Part shown: positions 1,400 to 31,000 of the stretch, piece after piece
Position numbering within the stretch: the first letter of the stretch is position 1
How the letters are laid out: each line of letters begins with the position of its first letter
NCBI GenBank assembly: GCA_000708835.1
Contig: DF237643.1
Coordinates: forward strand, 1 to 43,077
Length of the DNA: 43,077 nt
Direction of reading: 5' to 3'
Source of the DNA: Klebsormidium nitens
Lineage: Eukaryota; Plantae; Klebsormidiophyceae
Program-made: the position numbers and the translations under genes
The notes under the pieces: model-generated
Seen by the model: only the letters and a program-made list of their open reading frames with translations
Databases searched by the model: none
Told to the model about the DNA's origin: nothing

Positions 1400-3439
1400 C
1401 GGCTTTCGTAATCAAGTATCCCACGTCATTGCAGTATCCAAAGATAATCAGAAAACCCTGGCGAGTAGAAGCTGATGGAGGCAGCTTGAGCAAAGCCCAA
1501 GAGTAGTTGCGCCCAGGAGCCCACTGGGATCGTAGTTGCTCGTCATGAACACCGAAGGGTCATATATCATAAAAAGGACAACAACGTGTAAGTAAGAGAG
1601 GAACGTTTGGTAAGCTCTACTATCTCGGAGAAAATTGCGCCTCTTCTGAACACAACATTCAAGTGAGCTCAGAAAAGCCCTCTGGCCATAAAGCGATCCC
1701 CGCTTCCGGGCCCGTACTAAGCGCCCGCGGCCGCTCATGCACAAATCTTTTACCATGCGGAAGTGGCAATGCTCAGCACTTCAGGCTTGGCCGCCTCAAT
1801 CATGATCGGCTTGCAGCGACTCCAATGCTCGGACAAAGCGTTGGCGCGGTCGCCGCCTCCGTCGGTAGGGGCCGCATGTCAGGTTCAGCCTTATTCGAGA
1901 GCGTGTTTTTCATAAGGATCACTGTTTGGTACCAGACACCTAGCTGGTAAGCCAGCACGCGTACGCAAGGGCGCTTGCGAGATAAAGGAAAGGTGCCGAG
2001 TGGCTCGAAAACGTATGCGTCGGCCAATGCAAATCTGGTCTTTAAGTCCAAACACCGGTTGCCCGTCTTCGCTGACCGTCGGCTGAGCTTGGCGCGCGCG
2101 CGCGCGTGTGAGCGCCACCTTCTCGCGCCAGTCGGGCAATACCGCGCGCCTTCACCAGAGCGCCCGGGCCCGTCGACTGGGGCTACGTCGCTCTGACAAA
2201 AAGTGAAGACCTGGGATACGCCTCTTAGCTTCTGCTAATATATAGGTCTAATCTTTAACCCCTTCAGAAATGTAGTCGCTAGCAAAGACGAGACGTCCTC
2301 TGTAACCGCTACCCCTGTCTGTACAGCCACCCGGCGCAAGCAGGTCGTAAGATGTAATGTCTGCAATGAAACCGGCGAGCAGATTTGCGCACCGCCTGAA
2401 GCGCGCAAGCGTCGAAGAATTCGGCGGCGAAGATGAAAGGGCATCCGGAAGTTGGGAGTGCTTCGGGCCTTTGCCCGAAGCATCGCTGACGTCACTGCCA
2501 CCACGCGTTTGTGCATTCACGACGGACGTCGACCAATGATTGGTGCAAGAGACCAGGGCGCTCAAGAAGATCTTCAAAGTGCATGCGGATTGTATTCCGA
2601 AGTTACGGATCCAATCGATGGCATCCGAGCCATTACAGCGACAGCTTGGCTTCTAGCAACCATCTATAATGCTTCGTCCTTGCCACGTCATGGAGTTCAA
2701 AGGGAAATACTAGACGAAAGAAGGTCGCACGGGATTGCGCGGGATTGCCGGGATCAACAAAAGCATTTAGATGCGCCCATCAGTTGATTACCACACCTAC
2801 AGGGTTCGCGAGGAAAGGAAGTCCTGCCCGATGTGACTTCGTTTTTAGTCCGCATATGCATGGCGGAAGGAAAACACGGATGGGGAAGGGACGGAAGGGA
2901 CCCTCCTTAAAACCAGTTAAGGACCAAACCAAAAGCTTCGTGTACATTTCATCGAAGTCCTCATTTTTGCATGGCTAGCTTTGGTGGCGTTCGAGATGAA
3001 ACTCGGTGTCATACTTCACGGGAGACTCCTCTCAGTTTAGCATCTATCTCAACCAGCAATATAGTATACCCGCCTTGAGAGAAACGTTCCATCCTAGTAC
3101 GCTGTCGTGCGGCAAGGATGTCAAAGCAATTGCGTGCGATTGGAAAATAAACAGCTTCCAATATACCTTTATGCACCGCAGCCGTCCGCTCAATGGCTCC
3201 GCCGTGCTCACGTCATCTTTAACGTCACCCAGGCCTGACTTCTGCAGCGCCCAGCGCGCGCAGTGCGCTCGGTCTTTGCGAACGCACAGGTTTGATGCAA
3301 AGTGCGCTCCATCAGGGTATCTTATAGCTTTCCGATCAGGCCGCACAACGAACGCCGTTCCTAGCGCCCCGGCCCTTACGGGTCGCTTCATTCTTCGGGC
3401 AACCTATTATACGTAGGCCGCGTGAACATACGTCAGCAA

Positions 3440-3830
3440 TCAGTGCTAATGCCGCGCCGCAGCCGCGCGCCAGTCCGAGTCGCGGCCGCCGTTCTACGGC
3501 TCCACGACCGCGCCGACATTAATTTATTTAGTTTTAGAGGGGCCCGCGGTCGCGCGGCCACGCAGCCGCGCAGACGCTCCTCGCTCCCGCACTGGCCCGG
3601 CCGCCAGAAAGCGCCCCGGCCGCGTGGCCGCTGTCTTTCGGTCAACATGGCTTTATTGGCTGCCACTCAAACGGTCAGCGCGCGCGCGCTGAGCAATCAG
3701 TGGGTCTCAAACGCGCGCGGCTGCGCATGATTGGGGCGGCCGCGCGGCCGGTCTGCTACGCCGGCCCCACGCGCGGGGCGCCACTAGCACGGCCGCCCGG
3801 GCCTCCGAAGCTGCGGCCGCGGCCGCGCCG
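3440..3830. other. CGCG/GCGGCCGC-rich CpG-island-like block with CCAAT-like motifs
   Basis: Dense CGCG and GGCCGC, a perfect palindrome TCAGCGCGCGCGCGCTGA (~3675-3692), and CAATCA/TGATTGG motifs. Smaller similar blocks occur at ~290-400, ~2080-2190 and ~7190-7370. Confidence 0.6.
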
Positions 3831-5060
3831 TGTCCGAAGCGTCTACGGACAAGTGAGTACGTCCGTGAACCAGCGGTCAGTGTGATTGGTCACGCTACCT
3901 TGGAAGAGAGTCGAATTCACTACTAAGGGTCTCGGCCGGTTGCTAACAGAGCAGCTTCATGCTGGAAAACAGCATCCTCCCTTGGAGAAGCAGTCACGCG
4001 CCCAGTGGCCGTTTCATCACGGCTGCTCTTCACAACTCTTTGATCTGGGTTGCAAGCGCGATTGATTGTCGCCTTCTCTAGTTTCATTCAATCGAGTGGC
4101 TCATTCTTGAATCTTTCAAGGGTAGATTTCTGATCCATATGAACTTCCATTGATGAAGAAGTGTTGCAACGCCTTCAGATTCGCTTCAACGCACCAATAT
4201 GCTGTAAACCGCCCCTGTTCAAATTAGCTGTTTTAGCTGACAGATGAATAATCATAGTACTTTCTAGTATTTCTGTCGGCCACAGAGGATCTGCAAAGAA
4301 AGAAAATAGGATGTAAGATATGTTCTGTTTATTATGCATACTAAACGGCCTGTTCCGGCAAGGAAGCTCTACGAAAGACGTACTAGTAAAACAAGGGAGG
4401 TTTTTTGTAGTGGAAGAGTTGATTTTGAGAGGAGCTTGAGGCATCTGAATTCGACCACAGATAATGGAAAGTATCGCTGGGTTCCAGCCCATGCTGTGCT
4501 AATTGGTCATCCCCGCCTCAGCGTTTGAAGCTTGGGATAAGATGAGGAAACAAACGTTGCGGAGGGGCAGGTAATGCATGAATCCTCTCCATGCCACCAG
4601 TATGACGTGACCCCTGTTCGAACAAGCGTAGTGTGAGAGGAACACGACCGATCCGGATTGATCTTTAATTGAAGCAAGTGGCCTCATAGAAAGCTCATTG
4701 GGGTGGCCTCAACAGGGGTCAACTCCAATTGACATTCTTAGCAAATGAAGCGTCCTCTTTTACGATTTAGAGGACTCGATGTACCAGGGGCCTAAGTCCA
4801 AAGCCGACCCGAACCGGTTTCCAGCCTGCCTTTTCTGAGTCTCCCCCAGTGAGGACCATCAAAGAGGGACAGAGCACGCGCGCATGGACCTCGTGCCATC
4901 AGTAAGACGTGGCCCTCCTCATGAACTATTGTAAGCTGAGAAGGACACGATTGATGGGGGATCGATCTTATCCAAGCAAGTGGACTCATGACAAAAGCTG
5001 TTGGAGTGGACCCGATCACGGTCGGCTTCAACTGGCAATCTGAGCAGTTCAATCGCCTCT
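3790..5060. repeat. Copy B of the ~1.1 kb duplication plus a third partial sub-copy (~4930-5060)
   Basis: Partner of copy A. The sub-block GGACACGA..GATGGGG..ATCGAT..AAGCAAGTGG..TCAT..AAAGCT occurs three times (~1165, ~4640, ~4940). Confidence 0.9.
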
Positions 5061-10183: not shown

Positions 10184-13100
10184 TCACGCCGTCACGCCAA
10201 ACTCCGCCAGCTCCGCCTTGACCCGGGCGTGGTAAGTCTCGTCCGGGTACCCGTGCTGTGCCGCGCCGCCGTACGGGTGTGTCTTGTGGTGAATCCCCGA
10301 CCAAACAACCTGGTTAAAAAGAACCGGGGTTTGTCAAACCCGATTGCATTTACGTTTGTTGCTTTCAACAATTATGATTCTTGATTTTTTAGTAGGTACC
10401 CGTGCTGTGCTGCGCCCATACGGGTGGGTCTTGTGGTGAATCCCCGACCACACAACCTGGTTAAGGTAATCTAAGGTTTGTTAGACCCGTTTGCTTTTAC
10501 CGAGTTTGTTCTGAACAATTATGATGTGTAAGTTCATTGGCGGGTACTTGTGCTGCGCCGCGCCTTCGTACGGGTGCGTCTTGTGACGACATTCCGACCA
10601 CACAACCTAGTTAAGGATACTGAGGTTTGTCAGACCCCTTTGCTTTCACTGTTTTTGGTTTCAATAAGAGAAATTCAGGATTTGTCGGCGGTTTATTGTG
10701 TTGTGCCGCGCTTCCGTATCGGCTAGTCTTGTGATCAACTTCTATGTCTGAATCACGGAAGAAGAATGTCAATCCAATTTCGGGTGAACTTGTTGTGACG
10801 CTGACCTCCCAGTTCCGACCGTTCGTCTGTGATCGCCCCACTGTGAAGAAATGCTCTCCGCTTGGTGGCTGTCTGCAGGATCCTGATTCCCCGCACGGAA
10901 ATAAATCCCACTTTGCTGAAGGTTCCGACGACGTGAGTTCTCAAAGTGTTGTACAGTTGAGCAACGCTGACCTGGTTATTCCGCCCGTTTGTTTGTGACC
11001 GGCTCCCTTCGCTTGAAGGCCATCTGCAGGATCCCGCTTCGACAAACAAAGATTCGACTTTCTTCCCTGGCAGTTGCCTGGGAAGAACCTCACAAACCTT
11101 ACAAAGCTCCAAATTCAAGTGGCCCTGACCTGGTTATCCCGCCCGGTTGTCTGTCAGCGCCCGATGTGAACGTGACGCTTGAAGGCCGTCCGCAGGAGTC
11201 CCGGTTCCGCGCACACCAGTCAAAGTAAGTTTACGGAAAGTTGCAGAACTCAACTCTTTTTGATATTTATAATCTAAGCAAGGCTGACCTGGTTATCCAG
11301 GCCACCTATGTGTGACCGGCTCCCTGTGAGAAGATGTCTTCGCTTGAAGGCCGTCTGCAGGATTCCCGCTCTAACATACAATGTTTCAATCTCTCTCCAC
11401 TGACAGCCGGGAACTTTCGACCTTACAAAGCTCCGAGTCCAAGCGACGCTGACCTGGTTATCCCGCCGTCTGTCTTTGACCGGCCCGCAGTAAACGTGAG
11501 CCGCCGCTTGAAGGTGGTACGCGAAAGTGTTCGTTCCGCGCACAACTTTCAAATCCGTTTTTGCTGGAAATTTCAGGGGTGTCCTAATTTTGAGCAACGC
11601 TGACCTGGTTATCCGCCCGGTTGTCTGTGACCGCCTGACTGTGAACGCGAGTCGCCGCTTGAAGGCGGTCCGCAGTAAGTCCCCGTTCCGCGCAAAAAAT
11701 CTCAATTCTTTTTTCCTGAAAGTTTCAAGGGTGTCCCAATCTCAAGCATGCTAACCTGGTTATCGCGCCCGGTTGTCTGTGAGCGCCCGACGGTGAACGT
11801 GAGTCGCCGCTTGAAGGCGGTCCGGAGGAGGGCCAAAACTTCCCGCCCCTGGGCGTCGTCTACCAGGTACGCCACCCGGTTGGTACCGGAGTAGTGGGTG
11901 CCCGGGTTGGGGTGGTTGGGGCCCTGGAAAGAAAAGGGAATGCTCTCAACTCAGGAACAGACTATGCTCACAGCTCTTGATTAAAGAAGTGGGTTTGCGG
12001 TGTTTGGGGCTCTAGTCAAATCTAATCCTGCTGGGTAAAGGATTTGCGAAGGGTGACGGAAGCTTTAGCGGTACTATCTTCTACCAGGTACGCCTCCCGG
12101 TTGGTACCGAGGAATGGGTACCCGGGTTGGGGTGCTTGGGGCCCTGGGAACATGGGTTTTCCATGTAACTAGAAGGGGGACTCAAAGGTCTGGATTTGAA
12201 ATTAGTTTTCAAGGAGGTTTCGATCAAGGGTTAAGACATCCTCAGCTCTTGAAGCAGGACTGGACCTTTAGAGGTTGGAGCTCTTGGAACAAAAATGCGT
12301 CTGGATTCCGGCTGGATGACACTGAAAGTTCGGCGGCAAAAGAGACCCTTTGAGCTGGTTCGGGCAGAAATCATGAAGCGCCAGTAGCATTTGGAGGTTA
12401 GGCTGCTCACAGATGAGGGTAGAGTTAATCTGGGCTTTGGGACGAGGATTTTGCCCCGGAGCCCCAGTTTTAAAGACGGGTGGTTGCAAAGAAGCTGAGA
12501 GTTGCGAGATTGATTACCTGGACCCCATGCGGGAAGCTGTAGTTGATCACTATGACGCCACTGCCCTCGTGGCCTTCCAGCGCCACGCACGCGTGCTTCG
12601 CCTGCGGTGCGTTATGCAGCCGTTAAAGGGGGCGCTGGATGCCGCAGATTGCGCACTCGATGACTATGTGTACTTTTCTCATGGAGTATTTCAAAAATTC
12701 GCGAAAATCGGCCCCTCAAATCCGCAGGTCGCCCAAGTGGTGGACAAATGGGTCCTACGCCCAATGTGCAGCACTGCTCGGTGAGCGGCAGTGAGACATA
12801 AGAGTCATAAGGTCCTCTAGTATTACGACTCGAATGTGTTCAAGGGCGCAGAAAAAGGCGAGGCTTGACATTCAAACGCATTCCGGACGATGCGAGACTG
12901 GATAAGGGCGGAGCTTCAATGATGACTACTGACACTGTTGCAGACTTGCAGAAAGCGCAGATGCTCATAACCGTCTCGTCAACCTTCTGGTTTGGACGCA
13001 AGTTTTGAACGCAAGTACTGCCCACCTGCTCGTAAGTGTACGTTTTTACGGTCAAGGTTCCGTTCTCCGGCTGGTTCCCCGTCCGAACGCCGTACGCCCG

Positions 13101-16100
13101 CATGCACGTCGGACACTTGGGCTTCTGCGCGAAGCACTTCTTGATGCACTCCAGGTGGTACTCGTGCCTGCGAAGAAGGGTTGAATCTTTCAGAGCCACT
13201 GAAGGCCAGACTTTCGGTATCTTCTGCATCCGTCAAGGTTCAGTGCTTGACGTACTTGCATTTTGCGAAGCACTTCTTGATGCACTCTAGGTGGTTCTCG
13301 TGCCTACGGACAATACACAGAATAAAGCGTCCGAAATGGCATCAAAAGTTTCAGGGTCAAAATTGTCCACGTCCATATGCGTGTCGCAGACTTAGGCGGT
13401 TGCTCTCGAAGCACTCCTTGATGCAATCCAGGTTTTACTCGTGCCTGCGGACCAGGTTCGCATCCGGCGCAAAATCTATCCGTGAATTTTGGACCAGACG
13501 TCCAATGCACGCCGGACGCTTGAGCTTCGGACAAAACAGTACCCAAGCAGGTAGAGCACTACGAATCAAACCACGGGGGCCTTCCTGTGGATAGGCTAGA
13601 TTTGGTCACAGATAGTTCCGAACCGTCCGCAAGAACGAACGTCCACAAACCTGCGCAACAATTAAAAGGCACCTAAATGTGCAAGACAACTCACTTGCAC
13701 AGCATGAGCCGCACGGCCGGCTTATCCCGCAGCGATTCGTAGCACACGACGCAGTCTTCATCGTCCGGGTTCTTGATTGTCCGGAGAAGTGATGGGTGTA
13801 CGGAGCCGTCCATTGGGAAATCGACGGCCGAGAGCGGGGCCTCGTCTTCATCTTCGGGCTCCTTGGCAGAGGAGGTACTTGGGCTAGATGGACCTGCAGG
13901 AATAGTGGGTGCTGGTTTACGATGCGAGCAGATGCATCTGGCCGCAGAAGAGGTCAGCTCATAAAGAAAGTACAGCTCGCTCCGAAAGGTTTGGGTGTTA
14001 TGAAGTTCTACCGTCAACAAAACCCACCGGAATCTGAGCTTCGTTTTTCTCAGAGACCAGCGTCTCGTGTCAATCAAAGAAAGCATGACCACACAAGTTT
14101 CGACCTGGCAAGCGGAAATGCATCGGCATCTGGTCCGGATCACTTGAAAAATCTCCGAATCACGGCATTTTCAACGTGTACGGACTGTGTAGCACCTGGA
14201 ACAAAACGCGACAGTTCCAGACACCTAGTTTCGAGAAGCTACACCCTAACCAGACGCAAGGATCGGACTCCACAATTAACTGCGGAGAAAAGAGCATAAA
14301 AATGGTGTGGGTAAAGTATCTACATCTGAGCGTGCCATACCGGCTGGCGGCGCGTTTGCAGACGTCCCCGGCACTTGAGCGCCCGGCGCGAGGCCCGCGA
14401 GCCTAGCAGACCTCCGGAGTACCATCCCCGCGATGTTGGACAGGAACCCGCCTGCCGGAGGGGTCGGCGCCGGGGCGGAAGGAGGGGGGGAAAGCGTGGT
14501 AGTCACCTTGCGCACGGGCTGCTGCTTGCCGTTAATGGTCTGCAGAGGAAAGGGGACCGGAAAAGTGTCGGCATAAAGCGGGCCTTGAAGATGGCCTGAC
14601 GTCAGCCGCTTACGCCGACGACGTCAAGGTTTAAATGCTCATCATCCGGGACGGCGATTTTGTGAGGGGTCTTGGCACGGTTCGATTGGGGTTATCCATG
14701 CATGGTCTACGCCCACTTTAACTTCAGACAGAGATACAAAAATGGTTGGTCAAACAAAACAAAGTCCCGTTTTGAATGGGGGGGTGGCCATGCTGTAGGG
14801 AAATATTGACGCTGCACATGCGAAGACACATCGGGCCTCTGCAAGACTATAGCTCAAAACCCTGTCCAGAGGCGTCATGTACAAAAACAGTCCTTGGTGT
14901 TACCAAATCTCAAGCAGCAAACGACAGACCGGCTTTCAAAAGATCGTTGTCAACAACAAGCTGGAATTGACACATCAATCGGCTCTCCCTTTGCTCTGCA
15001 TGCACCGCCAATTAGGATCGACAGGTCGGATTTCTATCAAAAAGAATTATAAAGAACACATTGTTTCCGTCTTCTACACATTTTAATCTCTCAGAAGAAA
15101 ACCCTGTCTGAAAGAGGGTGAGTCCGGTTGGTGGCTCCAATCACTTGTCCCGGCTACTCTTGAGGCCAGCCGTGCCTCAAAGCATAGCCTATCACGGCCA
15201 GAAGGTGGGACTTCAAACTGCGATGCGATAAGAAAAAAAAAAGAAAACAGATTGAAATAAAACAAAACACAACGAGCAAAAACAAAACCTTGCTATTTGA
15301 GAAAGTTGCTCAAGCAGACAGACGCCGTAGCGCTCCGTCCCAGCTTCTTCCCGCTTTTGATCGCGTCAAAAGTACTGCCAACGAGCAGACGGAGATGCTT
15401 TCGATCTATGGGAGCATAGAAAAGGGATTTCAAGACTTAAGCCGGGCAAGGAAAGACAAAACGACCGCGAAGAGCTCGCGCGCGCGCAATCAGACCGTCG
15501 CGAGAACGTGAATCAGACGGCGTATCCAGACTTTAGATACATGTTAGATTCTGAATAAGCGCTCCTCCTCAGAAGGGGGCATCCTCGCGTTTCACAGACT
15601 ACAAGAAGCGTGATCCGGCAGCAGCTAGAGACCCTAGTCCTTTCAGCGTCAGAGCATGTTGATCCGGAAGGCCGTGTGAGAGTGTGTGGTTTTGCCACCC
15701 TCCCAACGAATTATGGTTCACTGCTGAGCTGTGGCAACTGCTTCCGTAGACCTCTAGCGGGAAACCAATGAGACTCAAGTGACCATATCAAGCTGCTAAA
15801 CGAGATTGCATCCTCATTCTATAGTTAAGAAAACCTGCCATGAAAGCATGATCCAAAGGATCAACCAACCGACAACAGAGTTCAAAGGACAAAACACTCC
15901 CGGTGTAAGGCCGAACAAGGGAAATTTAATCCTTCTCAAAGCTTGCTCGTTGAGAATAGCAGGGGCGAGTCGCTCAACAATCCCGCGTCAACGAAAGAGT
16001 AAAGTACGCGCAGAGCTTGCGGAAAGAGGGGGCCTCTTGGCGTCAGAGCGATAGCGCCAACACTTGGAATTCAATGCTTCCAGCTTCCTAGCGGAATGCT

Positions 16101-19100
16101 CGTCATGGCCAAAGGTGAGCCCAATCCCAACCGCGGAATAGATAGACTGGCCCTCGAACAATATAGGCTCATCGGGAACGCAGCTCCTTAGTCGCAGAGG
16201 CAGATGCCCCAAGTGGTTTTTCACCTTTGAAGCAAAACCGTGCATTGAGTTTGCATTCCGTTTCTCGACAGTGGAATGGGATCGAGCGAATTGAGCTTTT
16301 GTCTATCGTCGGATTTGTTGAGATGCAACACGCTTGTCGTCTGCTGTCGACATCTACCGTGCAAGTCGAGAAAGCGATGTTTGCGGAGTTCCTCACTAGA
16401 TACTTTCCTGTTTCGACGTCAGAGAAATACGAAAGGGAGCCTGAGATTACGTGGCTTTACCAACCTCCCAGCAAGTTGCTCTTCACGGCCAAGACGTGAC
16501 GCTTGAGGCTCTCAACATATCGCCCGGCTCTCGACGAGTTGCCATAAAGACAAAGTAAACCGTACTGCAGATTGCAGCTAAACTGTCCACGATTGTAATC
16601 TGTAGGCACCAGTGGTTTACAGACCCAAGCAAGAACCATCGATCTCACATTTCTGCCCAGATGCGTGGCGCGGGCGGAAAGTCCACCCGCGCTTCGGGAA
16701 TTGGTGAAGCCAGACCGCCCGAGGTTTTAGAACACCGCGCTGACCCGATATCCTGTGCGTACACAGATCCGATGCACTCCGCTAAGAAAGTGCTTGACAG
16801 CAGCTGCCAACACTGCGTCACCTCCATCATCCAGCTCCTTTCACGCAAAAAAGAAAAAGGAGGGAACGGAAACGGACGAGGATTGATAGACTGAAAAGGC
16901 ACTGTAAAAGCGGAGTTACAAAAGCATGTCGAATAACCTGGGAGAAACAACGGTTCAACCAAGGGAACGCGCACTCTAGGCATGCCACTTCAGCAAAGAT
17001 AAACAGGTACTGCAGATGAAAGTTGTTGGTATAGTCCTTATGCTAAGGGGAGACGATTCATTTGCGGAGACCTGAGCACTCACAATGCCGCCAAGACGAG
17101 AATCTTTCCAGGTACTGCAGAAATCACTGCCGCTCGAGGACCAATTGCGCGTACCTCAGCAAAGGTACGAGGGGTGTGAAGACTCTTATTTGGAAAGAAG
17201 ACCTGCTTCAACAAATGCACCGTGGTTGAGGGCGGCGAAGGGGCATCGACAGCCTTGCATAGAAATTTGACAGATTTAAGGGCTTCAGTGCAAGCTTCAC
17301 CTCTGGACTAAGCATTCGCTGGAAAATTCAGCCACCCAGGCAACCAGCATCACTGCCCCCGAAGGAACCATCCGTCCGAACACGGGTCGAATAGATTATA
17401 GCTTCTTGAACATGCAAAGTTTCAGAGGTATGCAAGACGATTGAACTCCTGCTACTCGCAAGTAAAGTACATCACAGGCCGTCACTGTCAAGTTGGAGCC
17501 CTCCTCCCCTGACTAGGACAACGGGACGGGAAGAGCAACCGGAGGATTTTCTCCTTCTTGAAGTACATCATTATGTTCCAGATACTCAAAAGTCACAATA
17601 TAAAAAGCAGACGCTCGAACTCTTCTGACGTCATTGATGAAAGTGCTGCTCGACGTGCTTGTCATAAGCGTTGGCTCCGAGCCGGGACTCGTTCAATCCC
17701 TGAACAGATCTTTGGTACTTTCTTGTCCCAAATGGACGCTCGTCATAGCCAAACACCATGACCAAATGCACAACTGGCCCTGCTTTTGTGTTTGCCAGGC
17801 ATGCTCAAAGTCTGAAGACACATCTTTCAGGTGCAAACGCTTAATAAACCTCGGAATTCAAATCTTGTCCTTTGAAAGCTGCTTGGACTCTACCAGTTAA
17901 AACGGGTTTGCAGATATGGGGCAAGATTGCCGCTCCTAAGCCCCTCTTGCAAGGGGCGTCCTGGCAACACATCAGCTACTGATACACCCCCTATTTCTTG
18001 ATAATCACTATCTAAGACACGAGACTGGTTGTTCAAACAGATATTCGGAGGACGCTATGTGGAAAGACACGGTCATGAAGATCCGACGTTCTCAAAAAGA
18101 GTTATATTCCTGGGAACGGGCTCGAGCAGGATTTGCTTCTGGCATTCAAAAAAGGTGACATACGGAGCGACTGTCTGCCAAGCCCTTATGCTTTTTGGTC
18201 GCGTATGACTGTCTGAATTGCACATTCAGGCGTTTTGTCAGAAGCTCCCAAGTCAGTTGCTTCAGCAACACACGTGGAAATTGGAAGGATAGCCTTGTTA
18301 CATTCCTTAGGACAAGCAGAAGTGCAAACGCTTCGAACGACAATGAGAGGCGGGACGCCCTTTCCAAGCGAGGCAGAACCGACATACAGACCCCCTGAGA
18401 ATGCTGGCAAGTTTCAACAGATGAGTCTTCTCACCTGCCAGGCATCGACCCGAAACTCGATCCAACGGTCCTGCCCATGGAATTAACGCGCTCCGGGCAC
18501 AAAATGGATGGCAAAACCAACTGCCTTTGAAAAACTAGTAAGAATCCCCCTGACATGTTCAACCAGAGCAAATCTTACCACCTGCCACCCGTCGACCCCA
18601 AACTCAACTCAGAAGTCCTCCCTACAAAACAAAGATGCTCCTGGCACAACCAAATCCCGTATGAAAACTTCTGGGACATCCCCCTGACATGTTGACTTAA
18701 AGCGAAACTCCCACCTGCCACGCGTCGACCCCAAACTCGATCCGGAAGTCCTGCCCGTACAGCGTCGTGAAGTCGCACTCCGCCTCGCCCGCTTCCCGGG
18801 CCGCCTCCACCCGGACGCTGATCTCCGGCGGGTATGCCTCCCAATTGTTGCCGTCGAACCACTCCCACTGGACGGCGGCTTGGCCGGGGTTTGAACCAAT
18901 GGGGTTGACTATGCGTCGGGCGTTGCGGCGGTACCCCGTGATTGGATTCACCTGTGCAAGAGAGAACGAAAGTTTGGCACAATCGGTTGTCTGAATGGAT
19001 GTTCCAAGTTCAAGGCAGTTCGAGTTCTGCAACACATCTACACAACGGGAAAAAAACTAAAGACAACGACAACGACAGTCTTTTGAAAGGAAATACATCT

Positions 19101-25000: not shown

Positions 25001-28000
25001 GATTAGACTTTGTTAGTAGGACGTCACAATCATTTCAACAAGCAGGGACTCCAAAATAAAATATCAGAACTAACCATAAGCCTAAACATTGCGAACCATT
25101 TCAATAGTTGAACGTATACCCAAAGCGATCCGCTCTGCTCGCAGTTCCCTCCCAGCGTTTATACCATTGCCGAACTTGGAAACCGCTGGGCATCGGGGCA
25201 TCGCCGTCCGGACGTCCGTGGGCCTGGTCCAATATTTGGACACTGAGCGGACGGTGCATAAGGCCCCCGCGCCACACCCGGAGCTGCCCGCCCTTGTAGA
25301 CTCTTTGCGCGGCCGAATGGTAAGCGTCCCGTGTAAACCCTGCGGATCTGGACTTTTTTAGATCATTTTCTAAGGACCACGCTTGATTGCGGTAGGCATC
25401 TGCGGACACTTCCCTGTTAAAAAGGTGTGTCTACAACCGGTACTGTCCATTTTACAAACAGCGAATGTTTTGGGCTTTTAACTTTCTCACGCGCTCCATC
25501 AACTACCGTTTTGAAGCTTCTAAGGCGCCCACGTCAGCCGCTCCAAGGCCCGAGCTGATACGCCTGGATTTGAGCTTCAAAAACTTTACGTACCTTATCA
25601 ATTCAAGAACTTTCCCCCGAATCTACGAACCTGAAGTCAATCGATTTCTAAATTTCTCCATCTCTCTCGTCAGCGCCTTCTTGTAACGTCCACAACGCCG
25701 CCGCCCTGCAGATTAACATGCGCCAAACCTTCGAAACCCCCGTTCCAAGTATTCAAACCCTACTTCATTTCGTTCCAGACCATTTTCAATTTATTCGCAG
25801 CGCCTTCTCGGAACGGCCCCCGACCCCGTCGCCCTCCACATCAGCATGCGCCAAACCTTCGAAACCCCGGGGCTGGCCTTGGGGGATCCCTCCGGTCGGT
25901 CCGAAGCAGCGGGCCAAGCGGGTGGAGACGGGGAAGACGGGTTCTGGGACGACGACACGCCCTGGGCGGCATGGCGTAACCTAGACGACCCGGTGCGAGG
26001 TGGGTTACGGAGGAAGGTTTCGCTTGGGTTAATATTTTGCAAGCCTCGCGGCTTTAACAATCCTGTTTCGACCCAAAGTATGTTGAGAACGGGGGAGGTT
26101 CACGATGACGACACGCCCTGGGCGGCGTGGCACAGCCTAGACGACCCGATTATTGGTGGGTTACGGAGGAAGGTTTGCTCAAGGCAAGGGAGAAGGTGTG
26201 CGAATTCAGACTTCCTTTTGTACCGGCCCATGTCCTTTCCTTTCCGCAGATCCACGGCTGAAAGAAGACCGTCCGAGTGACGTCCTTTGTTGAAGATGTT
26301 CTCCCTTGCGGCCAGTGCTCTTCCTTGACCGCAATGGTTCGAAGAACGGCCGATTTCGGCAAAATTCTACTCCTTTTGTCCGCCCGTTGGTCCGGATTAT
26401 CTGTCACCGTCCGTGTCCGGAAGATGGTTCCTTCTCTACGGTCCGCACCGTCCGCATGCTTACAGGCTTCGCTTTGTGGCCCTTTGTGTCCGCAGACGGT
26501 GGACATATTGGTATGACTAGTATCCTTACTCATATTGTGCATGTTCGATATCTGCAGGTTTCCGTCTGCACGTTCGCGGCCCTGCATGCGCACCCCGTCC
26601 AAAGAGCATCGGACTGAAAAACGAGCGGTCCGTAAGTCCCTCGTACTGACACCGTCCGCATATTTGCAGGCTTCCGTGTGTCCGCCTCATGGCCTTTCCT
26701 GTCCGCAGCCGGTCCGAAAGATGTCCGAGCGATTGAGGTCAAGCCGGCGGGGTCAGCCGCAGAGTGGCGCCTCGAGCCGGTTTTTGACACGACACACAGC
26801 GGGTGAGAACCCCCAAGTGGGGGTTGCGGGATCTGACATAACGAATAATATTGCTCGGCAAATTTTAAGGTCATTTGAAAAGCTGCGCGCCTACGACTGT
26901 TGCTGCACGTTCTGGTCGAAATATTGGTTTTCGCGTGCCACGGAGAAGCCACTTGGGGGTTCGTCCTCTTGAAAGTACTCAGGCGAAGAAAAAGCTTCGA
27001 AAGGCGGGCTTGCGAAAAGCTGTTCCCACCTCAATGTTTTGCTCACAAAGTGCAGATTGTTTGAGTGATTTTTATATGCCGATGTCCTCCCAAGGTTTCA
27101 GCAACGACTAAGCACGTTGATTGTATTTTCGGACTGGAGCACACAAACCTTGACAGCCGCAAAGTCCAATTGACAGCCGCAACATCCAATCGAAAACCAC
27201 CAGTAGGAAGCCATTGTAATCAAAGTATCCTACAATCAAGACACTGTCCGCGCTCCTCCGTTGCGCAGAGCAGTCACCGCTGAGGGGGAGGCCAGCGGCT
27301 TCGCCAGCTCGCTCCGGGCGCTTTCCATCGCGTATCTGTGCACAATCGGCACCAAGTTTATGGACGACTTTGCGCATTCCAGTGAGTCCTGCAGCTGCTC
27401 TGCTGCTCATCAAAAGGCCATAGTCGAAGCATGTTTCTTCGATGAAAGTTGTTCAAGAGCTCAGAGTCTGGTCCTCAGTGTGCTCCCGCTTCCCGTCACC
27501 ACATCGGAAAGTCATCGGGGCCAAATGTCGAAAAGAAGCAAACCTGGGGCTTCATTTTGGCCGCGTGATTCATTTCGCCGTCGTCTTTCGCCGCGTGTTC
27601 TCTATGATCAAGCCGGTCCGAGCGATCCCGTCCTTTCTAAAATCAAGCCGCCGAATCTTCTCTCGTTCTGAATCAAAGATTTGGACTCCAGCACCTGCCA
27701 CTGTGAAGGCCAAATGGTGTTCCGCAGAACACGGATGACGAGCTGCAACCTGTTGTCATGCAGACCTGACCGAGCGGAACGAGATGTGGGCCCTCCGTCG
27801 TGCCTTCGACGTCCCCGGCTCCCTCTTTCAGATCCCGCCCCCGACTGCTATCATTCGAAGCGTTCAGAAGCTCTTTGATGAAGGTGAGCGCTTCTGCGGT
27901 TTCTAAACTTTTTTGTGGGCTGCTCAGCGGTTCCTTTTGCGCTCCTTCATTACACTTGCTTTCATGACACACATCCGCTTCAACGATAATGCAACCGACG

Positions 28001-31000
28001 GAGATTCATATCCGCCCTTACGGTCCATCTGTGTGAATCTTCTGAAGCGCCAGTCTCTTGAATTAGCACTCTTTTTCCGCCTTCATTCTTCGCTGCCCAT
28101 GCTCCGTACTCTAGCGTCGATCAACCTCTCTTCCGCCCAGCTGTGACGATAAGTTCTTTCACTGTTGCTCCTTGCTTCCAGATTCCCCTCTGCCGGAAGC
28201 ACCCCCGGCCGCAGGCCGACCCCTTCACCTTCCCTGCAAAGCAGCGCCTCCAGGGTCCCTATTTGCACGCTTCAGTATGCAGGCGCTTCGCTCCCCCAGA
28301 ATACAAGGTGGGGTTACCATTGAAAGCTCAGTGCTGAAACCTCTGGGTAAAGGAGATTTAGGGTTCCAAAGCATTCTGGGGGTTGACAACAATCTAATGT
28401 GCTAAGACTCCAATTTACCCGAGCTTCGGGCTCAAAGCTGTTTGTAAGTTGGAGGGAACAAGGGGCGAAAAGTTTCGGGGTTGACGATACAAGTACACGT
28501 TTGCAGCCTCGGAGAGTGGTCAAGTAGAACTCGTTGCCGGACAGCAGCCTTCTTTGTTCTTATGTTCCACTAGTACCATGACGGGCACGCAGTCGTGCTA
28601 ACGAGAAACACGACCTGTAGTTCGACCCTTGGTCAACCCGCAAGTTACCCTAACCCGAAGCCTAAACCTAACCTGCAGCTGTAGCGGCGCTGTGGACACA
28701 GCTGGTGCAGGAGGTCCGGTGGTTCTGGGAGGAGGCGGAGCCGCTTCCCCACGTCGCAGCTGACGGGCCGCCCGATCTCGCGTGCTGCCTCGTGCACCAA
28801 AAGCTGCAAATGGTAAGCGTTTCCATACTAGTTCTTTGAACTTGGTCGCCTTACGAGTGTTGAAGCGCGGCGACTCCACTTGGGCCCGAAGGGTTGCCCG
28901 ACCGCGCGTGCTGCCTCGCACACCAAGAGCTGCCGTTGGTGTCGACTGTTTGCATGCAATTTCGAGATAGTAAATCGGTCGCAGATTCGATACTCGCTGC
29001 CAGTTTGTGCGGTGTGTCGTAAAGTGTGTAAGCAAGGCTGCAGATAGTGGGCGTTCGAAAACGGCGGCGCCACGACCAGACTGCCGTTGCTTGTTTTCTG
29101 GAGACCTTTACCTACAACGTTTGAGGGTCGATTGGCCTTCTGCCTAGTAAATGAGAAGAAGGAACGGTGGTTTGAGCTTTGATCAAACGTTCTCGAAGTT
29201 CGTTAATTGCTTTGTTGCTTGGTCGTTGCTGCTTTATTCAGGGTTCTCTTCCGATCGAGATGTCCTGTATCTTAACGCGACACGGAGGAAGAGGAGCCTG
29301 GAAAAAGCTGATGTTTCAGGGCCTCTACGTTAGTCGCATTTGTTCGTCGAGCTCGTTCCTCAGCAGGGAATTCTCAGGCCACTGGCTGCTGATCAGTTCG
29401 GGTCTTCTGTGGGCTTTTGGAGGTTTCGCGGACTAAGCTGACAGCGAGCACTCATTTTGTGACACGCACCTTATGGCATTCCCGTGTCTCCGTAGAAAGC
29501 GCAGCTTGTGAGTTCTACCCGTGCTTTGTACAGCTGGCAGCGTGCATCAGGAAGCGCGCAGCGGACCCGGACTTCCGGCGGAAGAGCAGGCGGACGTCCG
29601 AGCAACGGACTTCGCCAGCGGACGACGTTTCGGACCGAGACACGCCCGACGAAAGCGACAGTCACGGGAGAGAAGCTGCAGAAGGTGCGTCACGATGACT
29701 TCTAACGCCGTCAGATACGGCATACTGTTTCTGAAAGAGAGTTCTGACTGAGTGACTTTGATAGCATCATTGAATCCGTGGATACGGGCAGTAAAGACTT
29801 GTCCAGCTTTGACGGCTTGAACTGTTGTTGCAATGGGGACGCTGTTTTGTTGCACAGTCTTGTTCATGTCAGAAAGATCTCGCCAATTTGGAACCATGTG
29901 GCAAGATCGATAGGACCGCTATCTTTTGGTCTATGATAGACGAAGCATGGTCAACCACACTTGCAACGTCGTACCCAGTGTTCCGAGAAGTCCACTCATG
30001 CATACCAATCGTGTGTGCATCATCTTTTCAAAACGGCCATCAGAAACCGAGATCGTCCTGGAAACCGGACAGTCAGTAGAACATGTTGCTTATCGCACGG
30101 CTCCGAAGGTCGAACGAGAACCCGAGATCTGGCTTGTCGGGTCACAAGTTGTAAACCGGCTTGTTTCGTGGCCACAGGGCCGTCAAGAGGTGGCGGCGAC
30201 GACTGGAACTCCGCCCCCGGCTGGGAGGACGCCGACTTTGAAGAAGAGCGCGCGTCGGATGCTACGGACGCTGATGTCACTGCTGACGCCCGGAAACAGT
30301 CCGCCGACCAACCAGAAACGGACACGTTAGCAGCCTCGGTTTTCGACTGCTTTCGAACGCAGGAGGAAGCGGCGTCGGAGGCGAGTGCGGACACGCAGTA
30401 CGACAGCTGTTCGGACACGGAGGTGTTCGAGTCGGGGGGGGGCTATTCGCCCACAGAACCGTCCACCCTGAGTGCGGGCGGGCGTCCGAGTTGGGCGCAT
30501 TCGCCGGGAGGCGCGTCCGAAGTGGTCCGGAAGCGCGGGAAAGAGAAGGATTGGAGGGTCCGGGGAAACTTTGGGGGGGGTGAAAAAGGGCCCGGGCAGA
30601 GGGGGCGGGACGAGGAAGATATGGACGGACGGGAAGGGTCGCTGGGCCCCGTGAAGAATCTGTGGCTGTTGAAAGTGAAGCGGAGGATACACGAGCCGAT
30701 AACACAGGTGAGTGGCAGAAAACTCCCTGCTTATACTTTCTACTTCGCGTGTAGCCGGCTCTCGGTTTTTGAAGCTTCTAAAGCCTCGAGCCTCCGTGCG
30801 AAACGCACCGGGAAGCATTTTGGGAAATGTGGAGAATGCCGAAGGACGGTTGTGACCAGCAATGCGTCCCGAATTGTGTTTGAGGCGTGCCAAACTGCCA
30901 TCGTCATCTTCGATCCGCTGCTGCAGACGTTTTGTCCCGGCGACCCGTCCCCCGTGATTTTACCCTCGGTGTCGCCCAAAAGCCGCGCGCCGTCCTCAGC

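What the first reader, a model, noticed from the sequence alone, without database searches (positions are those of the whole stretch)
10755..11756. Polarised six-copy donor array in Deltex intron 7
Seen: six copies follow the true donor at 151, 151, 165, 159, 158 and 166 bp steps. Each still translates recognisably (e.g. LLRTAFKRRLAFTVRRSQTTG versus the true LLRTAFKRRLTFTVGRSQTTG). By hand alignment over ~72 nt, the nearest copy is ~92% identical to the exon and the farthest ~65%. Inference: new units were added one at a time at the functional junction and pushed older ones into the intron, giving a time-ordered record of the exon. The alternative is one array homogenised by gene conversion near the selected copy.
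Basis: partly seen in the sequence, partly recalled or inferred. Interest (0 to 1): 0.88.

Follow-up and report, generated by a model that had tools for sequence, protein, structure and literature searches.

The report
Worn splice-junction copies filling one intron
The last intron of a Deltex-like gene is built entirely from worn, unused head-to-tail copies of its own exon edges; the copies keep older spellings of the exon roughly in order of age, and two related genomes lack the intron altogether.

Summary
Six decayed copies of the last 72 nt of the exon, its donor and about 80 nt of intron follow the true donor (minus strand, exon end 11756). The steps are 151, 151, 165, 159, 158 and 166 nt.

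The gradient is only partly right. Identity to the exon by position is 92, 80, 68, 85, 62 and 70 %.

- **Rooted test:** with two orthologous loci as outgroup, a ladder ordered by position is rejected (AU p = 0.0002).
- **Older states:** distal copies do keep more ortholog states (fractions .18 .33 .57 .13 .50 .60).
- **Best-fitting history:** four additions at the working junction in age order, plus one internal two-unit (~325 nt) duplication.
- **Splicing:** RNA contigs from four studies show only the true donor-to-acceptor joint.

**Unexpected result:** both related loci keep the upstream intron but have no intron at this position and no arrays. The 1446-nt intron is wholly six donor units plus about three acceptor units, and both its ends carry TAACCAG|GTT. 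It was probably gained in this lineage and then grown by junction duplication.

This is the kind of repeat called "mirages" in lancelets. The scan had already noted such arrays in other windows of this genome, which earlier notes call a green alga. It is most likely a neutral by-product.

The parts
11756..11923 (-). True exon (56 codons of the DTC domain). Its last 72 nt are the source of the copied units. The working donor GT is at 11755-11754.
   Evidence: Spliced RNA contigs in four runs; translation and Deltex homologues.
10310..11755 (-). The last intron, 1446 nt. It consists entirely of the donor-side and acceptor-side arrays and has TAACCAG|GTT at both ends.
   Evidence: Joint 10306->11753 (cut +3), 'both' = 10, depth 226/302/98/26. 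Profile hits tile the intron. It is absent from L001 and L002.
11605..11755 (-). Unit 1: tail t0 (11677-11755) plus exon-like copy 1 (11605-11676). 92 % identical to the exon, with a 1-nt deletion. This is the youngest real duplication: t0 and t1 share a ~20-nt deletion.
11454..11604 (-). Unit 2: tail t1 plus copy 2 (11454-11525). 77-80 % identical to the exon; long private branch.
11289..11453 (-). Unit 3: tail t2 plus copy 3 (11289-11360). Old type B, twin of unit 5 at a lag of 324-331 nt.
   Evidence: (D2, D9/D10, D12).
11130..11288 (-). Unit 4: tail t3 plus copy 4 (11130-11201). 93 % identical to the exon where aligned; 6-nt and 1-nt deletions and a stop. It is out of age order, either a twin of unit 2 or later homogenised.
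10972..11129 (-). Unit 5: tail t4 (similar to t2) plus copy 5 (10972-11043), which has a 15-nt deletion.
10806..10971 (-). Unit 6: tail t5 plus copy 6 (10806-10877). This is the oldest unit. It keeps 9 of 15 scorable ortholog states and its donor context has decayed to GGGAG|GTCAGC.
10310..10805 (-). Acceptor-side array. A 51-nt tail t6 is followed by a partial copy of the start of the last exon (about 10690-10754) and two full copies starting at 10606 and 10456. Each full copy is preceded by ...TTAAC(C/T)AG. Period is 147-150 nt. Identity to the true exon start is 62, 78 and 82 %, rising towards the true acceptor.
   Evidence: (Y profile, E from 1e-5 to 1e-25).
10184..10309 (-). Last coding exon (VVWSGIHHKT...AEFGVTA, stop at 10186-10184). 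It is the source of the acceptor-side copies.
12077..12150 (-). Single copy (72 %) of the acceptor plus the first ~70 nt of the same exon, lying 221 nt upstream in the preceding intron.
   Evidence: D10; D12.

Best explanation
The stretch is an array of six non-functional, decaying tandem copies. Each ~150-165-nt unit straddles the exon's donor junction: 72 nt of exon, the GT, and about 80 nt of intron. A tandem copy of such a piece is harmless, because only the first donor is joined to the full exon, so the copies simply become intron. Shown here: the array grew over a long time and mostly from the working junction. The far copy is the oldest, the near one is among the youngest, and one two-unit block was duplicated inside the array. 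Inferred mechanism: after a first local duplication, unequal exchange occurred between the conserved exon end and its most similar neighbour, which is the youngest one. Each exchange creates a hybrid unit next to the junction and pushes older units inward. This would explain why all copies share an edge state (CTG) that neither the exon nor the orthologs have. A mirror-image array grew at the acceptor. Together the two arrays make up the whole intron, which two related genomes lack. The intron was therefore probably gained in this lineage and then enlarged about tenfold or more by this process. The copies are ignored by splicing in steady-state RNA and most likely have no function.
For: - **Units and spacing:**
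- **Splicing:** only the true joint appears in the spliced contigs of four RNA runs. Intron contigs sit at about 6 % of exon depth in two runs, 9 % in X11 and 15 % in X14.
- **Decay:** copies carry frameshifts, deletions and a stop.
- **Age order:** ortholog-state fractions are .18 .33 .57 .13 .50 .60, with a nested pattern of derived states. The acceptor array declines 82, 78, 62 % with distance.
- **Block duplication:** t2~t4 and copy 3~copy 5 at a lag of 324-331 nt. Units 2 and 4 pair in the whole-unit tree with support 74/90.
- **Latest addition:** the nearest two tails share a deletion, which gives the 151-nt period.
- **Relatives:** L001 and L002 keep the same exon order and the upstream intron. 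At this position they read GACAACCAGGTTGTGTGG without interruption, and L001 has no direct repeats in the gene.
- **Wider absence:** 26 further metagenome loci and an oyster DTX3 gene are also uninterrupted here. A brown alga has a different intron four codons upstream.
- **Intron ends:** a 10-nt direct repeat ('both' = 10).
- **No sign of another role:** no Rfam family, no conserved fold, no inverted repeats and no copies elsewhere in the window.
Against: - **Weak statistics for polarity:** with only six copies, Spearman rho is 0.54 with p = 0.15. Adding two other arrays of the gene gives a hand-computed one-sided p of about 0.06-0.08.
- **Single-origin model not rejected:** AU tests do not reject the model in which all copies descend from one first copy (p = 0.11 and 0.27).
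- **Twin mismatch:** copy 4 is far closer to the exon than its presumed twin, copy 2 (5/69 against 17/74 differences). This needs an added conversion event or rate heterogeneity.
- **Non-uniform decay:** among the dead copies, exon-like parts are more alike than tails (0.64 against 0.37). The 16 nt around the donor are the best kept (0.83, p = 0.002). Pure neutral decay does not predict this.
- **Gain versus loss:** this rests on two close relatives of unknown exact kinship plus distant taxa. Precise loss of the 3'-most intron in their lineage is possible.
- **RNA evidence is limited:** assembled contigs drop rare isoforms.
Confidence: 0.66

Rival explanations
1. Single origin plus homogenisation. 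One early copy of the junction expanded inside the intron by copy-of-copy duplication. The resemblance of near units to the exon comes from gene conversion by the selected exon, not from youth.
For: All six copies share CTG and GTCAGCG, where the exon has CTC and GTTAGCA, and both orthologs also have CTC. Copies 3, 5 and 6 form a clade with support 85/88. An all-copies clade is not rejected (p = 0.11 and 0.27). Copy 4 looks overwritten. Exon-like parts are more alike than tails.
Against: The derived states are nested in four steps, so this model would need graded, repeated conversion. The nearest unit shares a tail deletion with the working intron start. That marks a real young duplication including intron sequence, which conversion from the exon cannot supply. 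Conversion does not explain why the most distal unit keeps the most ortholog states.
Confidence: 0.2
2. Functional decoys. The copied donors are kept by selection, for example as U1-binding sites or as regulators of splicing or alternative ends of this transcript.
For: The motif ATAACCAG|GTCAGC is nearly invariant in copies 1-5 although the rest of the unit is 60-80 % identical. The junction window is the most conserved part (0.83, p = 0.002).
Against: No alternative joint appears in four RNA runs. The related loci manage without the intron or the arrays. Copies carry random deletions and copy 6 has lost the motif. There is no conserved RNA fold. The same kind of array sits in many unrelated genes according to earlier scan notes.
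Confidence: 0.08
3. Ancient intron, lost in the relatives. The intron is ancestral and was precisely lost in the L001/L002 lineage. The arrays merely padded an old intron.
For: It is the 3'-most intron, the one most prone to cDNA-mediated loss. The terminal microhomology could itself promote precise deletion. The exon-derived origin of the non-exon parts of the units could not be shown.
Against: No unique intron core is left between the two arrays. Only 51 nt lie between the oldest donor unit and the oldest acceptor unit. Beyond the obligatory AG, the intron's last bases repeat the exon's last bases: AACC, about 1 in 256 by chance. No other sampled Deltex gene has an intron at this site. The oldest unit postdates at least two lineage-specific exon changes (GAC->AAG).
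Confidence: 0.3

Closest known systems
'Mirage' minisatellites of amphioxus (Adh3; globin genes BflGb6 and BflGb9; PMC3087553, read)
   Same: Both are tandem repeats whose unit spans an exon-intron boundary and which lie in the intron beside the authentic junction. Both 5' and 3' boundaries can be affected. Units in the globin genes are 150-160 nt. Regular splicing ignores the copies, although many keep AG/GT.
   Different: The amphioxus clusters are young (81-100 % identity), differ in length between haplotypes and show concerted evolution. This array is old (62-92 %), was identical in all samples seen, and is ordered largely by age. With its mirror array it makes up an entire intron that relatives lack. 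The organism is an alga according to earlier notes, not a chordate.
[quoted passage not shown]
   Same: The intron is absent from related genes. An AG|GT-containing direct repeat sits at both intron ends. The intron content is derived from the flanking exons.
   Different: The classical model predicts downstream-exon sequence at the intron's 5' end and upstream-exon sequence at its 3' end. Here the recognisable copies are arranged the other way round, and the tails show no significant likeness to the opposite exon. The birth event itself is therefore not reconstructed.
Tandem repeats enriched near intron-exon junctions in Chlamydomonas and Volvox (PMC3887541)
   Same: That study reports a genome-wide excess of intronic tandem repeats next to junctions in green algae.
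   Different: It covered units of 1-50 nt only and did not report units that contain the junction itself.
Tandem exon duplication with mutually exclusive splicing
   Same: Both involve local tandem copies of coding sequence with splice signals.
   Different: Here only the last 72 nt of the exon are copied, without an acceptor. Reading frames are broken and no copy appears in mRNA contigs.

Membership tests
Mirage-type junction minisatellite | The tandem repeat unit spans an exon-intron boundary. | tested here: met
   Each unit is 72 nt of exon, then GT, then about 80 nt of intron.
Mirage-type junction minisatellite | Copies lie inside the intron next to the authentic junction, which stays at the outer end. 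| tested here: met
   The true donor is at 11756 and the copies run to 10806. The mirror arrangement holds at the acceptor.
Mirage-type junction minisatellite | Regular splicing is not disturbed and the copies are not used. | tested here: met
   The spliced contigs of four RNA runs show a single joint. Rare isoforms cannot be excluded from contigs.
Mirage-type junction minisatellite | Length instability between alleles or individuals. | tested here: inconclusive
   Contigs from two RNA studies that span the whole array, shorter contigs from two more, and one DNA sample agree with the window, with no differences. No population data were available.
Intron gain by tandem duplication (Rogers model) | The intron is absent at this position in related genes. 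| tested here: met
   L001 and L002 are uninterrupted here while keeping the upstream intron. So are 26 metagenome loci and an oyster gene.
Intron gain by tandem duplication (Rogers model) | A direct repeat containing AG|GT sits at both intron ends. | tested here: met
   TAACCAG|GTT is at both ends, 10 nt in all. Judged from the copies and orthologs, about 8 nt (AACCAG|GT) are old.
Intron gain by tandem duplication (Rogers model) | The intron's 5' part derives from the downstream exon and its 3' part from the upstream exon. | tested here: not met
   Profiles of either exon edge find no match in the predicted places. Consensus tail against the opposite exon gives z = 0.16, and z = 1.9 (1.0 without the last 8 nt).
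Mutually exclusive or tandem alternative exons | Whole exon copies have both splice sites and an intact frame, and are used alternatively. | tested here: not met
   Copies are partial, lack an acceptor, are frameshifted or deleted, and do not appear in any joint.
Introner or transposon-derived intron | Dispersed copies of the intron sequence exist elsewhere. | tested here: inconclusive
   No match was found elsewhere in the 43-kb window. The rest of the genome was not searched.
Structured or known RNA (for example an intronic snoRNA cluster) | A match to an RNA family, or a conserved fold. | tested here: not met
   No Rfam hit at E <= 1. Consensus fold energy is -1.6 kcal/mol, and only 1 of 8 predicted pairs shows a compensatory change.

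The most novel reading that the evidence does not exclude
The same local ~150-nt duplication process that pads introns in this genome may also have created this intron. A duplication inside a once continuous exon, spanning AACCAG|GT, would supply a donor and an acceptor in one step. Exchange at both working junctions then enlarged the new intron to 1446 nt. The result would be a dated series of fossil exon states at each end and the oldest material in the middle. The unit arithmetic fits: 72 nt of exon plus a 79-nt tail at the donor, and a 72-nt tail plus 75 nt of exon at the acceptor. If this is right, these arrays are a live, repeatable route of intron birth and growth, and it could be traced step by step in this lineage.
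Probability: 0.3. Interest if true: 0.78.

Novelty: new variant of a known kind. Interest (0 to 1): 0.57.

Why it matters
Recently born spliceosomal introns with a readable history are rare, and how introns are gained and grow is a long-standing question.

Here one intron is absent from related genomes and consists only of copies of its own flanks. It also preserves, roughly in order, older synonymous and amino-acid states of the exon, such as Gln->Arg, AGA->CGA and GTG->GTC. That turns a repeat array into a small dated record. The array can be used to order substitutions in the exon and to measure how fast such arrays grow.

Earlier scan notes say the genome holds many such arrays. If so, the polarity and intron-birth ideas can be tested genome-wide with outgroups.

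If the array is only a neutral by-product, it still matters in practice. Decoy junctions of this kind mislead gene prediction.

Tried and rejected
- **Exon-derived tails:** I tested whether the non-exon part of the donor units comes from the downstream exon, and that of the acceptor units from the upstream exon, as an (exon7-exon8)n array would require. Local alignments against shuffles, nhmmer profiles in both directions and consensus global alignments were all non-significant. By eye, the tail ends resemble the first ~20 nt of the last exon and there are branch-point-like TTGAC motifs, but neither exceeds shuffled controls.
- **Other roles for the unit:** a dispersed element (no other copy in the window), a known RNA, a conserved RNA fold and long-range pairing (one weak inverted repeat) were all negative.
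- **Finding the window's own full-length protein and closer orthologs:** this failed. A search with a 400-aa homologue returned mainly fish DTX2. Length limits kept single-exon queries from reaching full-length proteins. Searches with the exon and with P0270 found only two close relatives.
- **A brown-algal intron near the site:** it looked similar at first but lies four codons upstream in phase 1, so it is a different intron.
- **Recursive splicing:** rejected, because the copies have no pyrimidine tract before their CAG|GT and no intermediate joints are seen.
- **Organism:** I did not verify its identity. "Green alga" comes from earlier scan notes only.

Full report
**What is there**

The window carries a Deltex-like gene (two WWE domains, a RING and a DTC domain) on the minus strand. 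Spliced RNA contigs from four independent runs define its 3' half. The exons lie near 14339-14543, 13694-13891, 13025-13166, 12517-12600 and 11756-11923. The last exon starts at 10309.

The exon 11756-11923 has 56 codons, phase 0 at both ends, and ends ...LLRTAFKRRLTFTVGRSQTTGRDNQ|GTTAGC. The intron that follows (10310-11755, 1446 nt) is the subject of the finding.

**The observation**

Six further copies of the motif ...GATAACCAG|GTCAGC... end at 11605, 11454, 11289, 11130, 10972 and 10806. A profile of the 100 nt before the donor hits these seven places and nothing else in the region, with E from 2e-18 to 2e-25.

Each unit is about 72 nt of exon-like sequence plus a 79-94-nt tail. The tails are homologous to one another at both ends and variable in the middle. 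The copies are dead as coding sequence. Copy 1 has a 1-nt deletion, copy 4 has two deletions and a stop, and copy 5 has lost 15 nt.

Contigs of 1496 nt from two RNA studies (X3, X8) cover the whole array without a single difference, and shorter contigs from two further studies lie on parts of it, also without differences. The array is therefore real.

**The gradient**

In a proper alignment, identity of the 72 nt to the exon is 92, 80, 68, 85, 62 and 70 % for copies 1 to 6. With gap columns left out it is 91, 77, 65, 93, 74 and 67 %. Spearman rho is -0.6 with exact one-sided p = 0.12.

**Outgroups**

A search with the exon's translation found two short ORF products at 86-88 % identity. Their contigs are genomic: L001 is a 53.8-kb metagenome contig and L002 is a 1975-nt contig.

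- L001 matches the window's exons in the same order.
- Both loci have the intron upstream of this exon, with the acceptor ...cag|GGCCCC.
- Third codon positions differ at 15 of 25 codons by hand count on the alignment, so these relatives are not close.
- All six copies share window-specific states such as AAG where the relatives have GAC. The relatives therefore branched off before the array formed and can serve as a root.

The rooted maximum-likelihood tree of the exon-like parts is (6,(3,5)) against (2,(1,(exon,4))), with supports of 65-88. It is not a star.

The clade that a position-ordered ladder needs, {exon, 1, 2, 3}, is rejected. AU p = 0.0002 on the exon-like part and p = 0.013 when the tails are added.

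At the 17 columns where both relatives agree and differ from today's exon, the share of relative-like states is .18.33.57.13.50 and .60 for copies 1-6. The pattern is nested:

- three changes are derived in all copies;
- three are still ancestral only in copy 6;
- two to three are ancestral in copies 3, 5 and 6;
- two are ancestral in copies 2, 3 and 5 (one of them also in 6);
- one is derived only in copy 4;
- two are ancestral in all scorable copies.

Examples are CAG (Gln) where the exon now has CGG (Arg), AGA against CGA, GTG against GTC, and ACG/GGT/GAC in copy 6.

**A history that fits**

Whole-unit comparisons give three pairs: units 1~2 (76 %), 3~5 (69 %) and 2~4 (65 %). Matches at a lag of 324-331 nt exceed those at one unit across tail 2 and copy 3. 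Units 2 and 4 pair in the whole-unit tree with support 74/90.

Tails 0 and 1 share a ~20-nt deletion, which explains the 151-nt period of the two nearest units.

The unit types therefore read A' A B A B C outward from the junction. That is what four additions at the junction in age order (C, B, A, A') plus one duplication of the A-B block would give.

Two points do not fit cleanly.

- Copy 4 has far fewer private changes than its presumed twin, copy 2. This suggests a later conversion or uneven rates.
- All copies share CTG and GTCAGCG where the exon has CTC and GTTAGCA, and the relatives also have CTC.

The second point can be explained. If new units arise by unequal exchange between the exon end and its nearest copy, the hybrid unit inherits its 5' edge from the older copy and the rest from the exon. 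Because the youngest copy is the one most like the conserved exon, such exchange would favour the junction end and would produce the polarity without any junction-specific machinery. This mechanism is inferred, not shown.

The data cannot reject the model in which all copies descend from one first copy (AU p = 0.11 and 0.27).

**The other half of the intron**

A mirror array of acceptor plus the start of the last exon fills 10310-10754 with a period of 147-150 nt. It has two full copies and one partial copy. Identity to the true exon start is 82, 78 and 62 %, falling with distance from the true acceptor.

Only 51 nt separate the oldest donor unit from the oldest acceptor unit. No unique intron core is left.

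**The intron is missing in relatives**

In both L001 and L002 the sequence reads GACAACCAGGTTGTGTGG straight through. L001 has no direct repeats at all in this part of the gene.

Twenty-six more distant metagenome loci and an oyster DTX3 gene are also uninterrupted here. A brown-algal gene has an intron four codons upstream in another phase.

In the window both intron ends read TAACCAG|GTT ('both' = 10). Judged from the copies and the relatives, about 8 nt (AACCAG|GT) of this repeat are old. Four of those are obligatory splice bases, which leaves about a 1-in-256 coincidence.

I therefore favour gain of the intron in this lineage (about 0.6-0.7) over precise loss in the relatives.

I could not show how it was born. 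The classical tandem-duplication model predicts that the tails derive from the opposite exon, and every test of that was negative. What remains in favour is the terminal repeat and the unit arithmetic: 72 + 79 nt at the donor and 72 + 75 nt at the acceptor.

**Function**

The spliced contigs show only the true joint. Intron depth is about 6 % of exon depth in two runs, 9 % in X11 and 15 % in X14.

There is no Rfam match, no conserved fold and no inverted repeat of note. The copies lack an upstream acceptor, so they cannot be defined as exons. That is a plausible but inferred reason why they are skipped.

One oddity remains. Among the dead copies, the 16 nt around the donor are the best conserved (0.83, against 0.64 for the exon-like part and 0.37 for the tails; p = 0.002). 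This could reflect homogenisation, uneven mutation or weak selection, and I could not decide between them.

**What is known**

Tandem repeats spanning exon-intron boundaries are described in amphioxus as "mirages", with units of 150-160 nt in a globin gene and no effect on regular splicing (PMC3087553). Intron gain by tandem duplication is documented in a few genes (PMC3265369, PMC4974935). An excess of short tandem repeats near junctions was reported for Chlamydomonas and Volvox (PMC3887541).

Earlier notes of this scan report many such arrays in other windows of this genome, which they call a green alga. I did not verify the organism.

New here are three things: the rooted, largely age-ordered reading of one array; its internal block duplication; and the absence of the whole intron from related genomes.

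Noticed in passing
window 13130-13464 (minus strand): There are three copies, at steps of 136 and 141 nt, of the acceptor side of the RING exon 13025-13166. The farther copy is more like the exon (83 %) than the nearer one (76 %), so polarity does not hold in every array.
   Followed up: partly
window 18429-18756, 25690-25868, 25948-26176, 28762-28940: Further direct repeats with periods of 126-156 nt lie in or near other exons of the window. They are probably more junction arrays. I did not relate them to splice sites.
   Followed up: no
L001 10128-10160: The related locus L001 has a small tandem duplication (GGATCCGTAT GGATCCGTAT) in place of the conserved HHKT motif of the DTC domain, which L002 keeps. 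That copy may be impaired.
   Followed up: no
L030 (brown alga Ascophyllum, Deltex-like gene) about 2724-3174 and 3546-4435: tblastn of the annotated protein matches two stretches twice at neighbouring places: residues 91-101 and 177-212. This may be exon-edge duplication in a brown alga, or an annotation artefact.
   Followed up: no
proteins P0001, P0002, P0003: Several database proteins match this one exon 3 to 17 times. They are either true multi-DTC proteins or gene models that read through junction copies.
   Followed up: no
window 10806-11756, units 1-6: Exon-derived parts of the dead copies are about twice as well conserved among themselves as the intron-derived tails: copies 3-5 are 84 % identical against 60-70 % for tails 2-4, and exon-copy 1 is 92 % against 73-75 % for tails 0-1. 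This is unexplained.
   Followed up: partly
window introns at 11924-12516 and 12601-13024: Other introns of the gene also show 5-6 nt that fit on either side of the joint ('both'). That is more than AG|GT alone would give.
   Followed up: no
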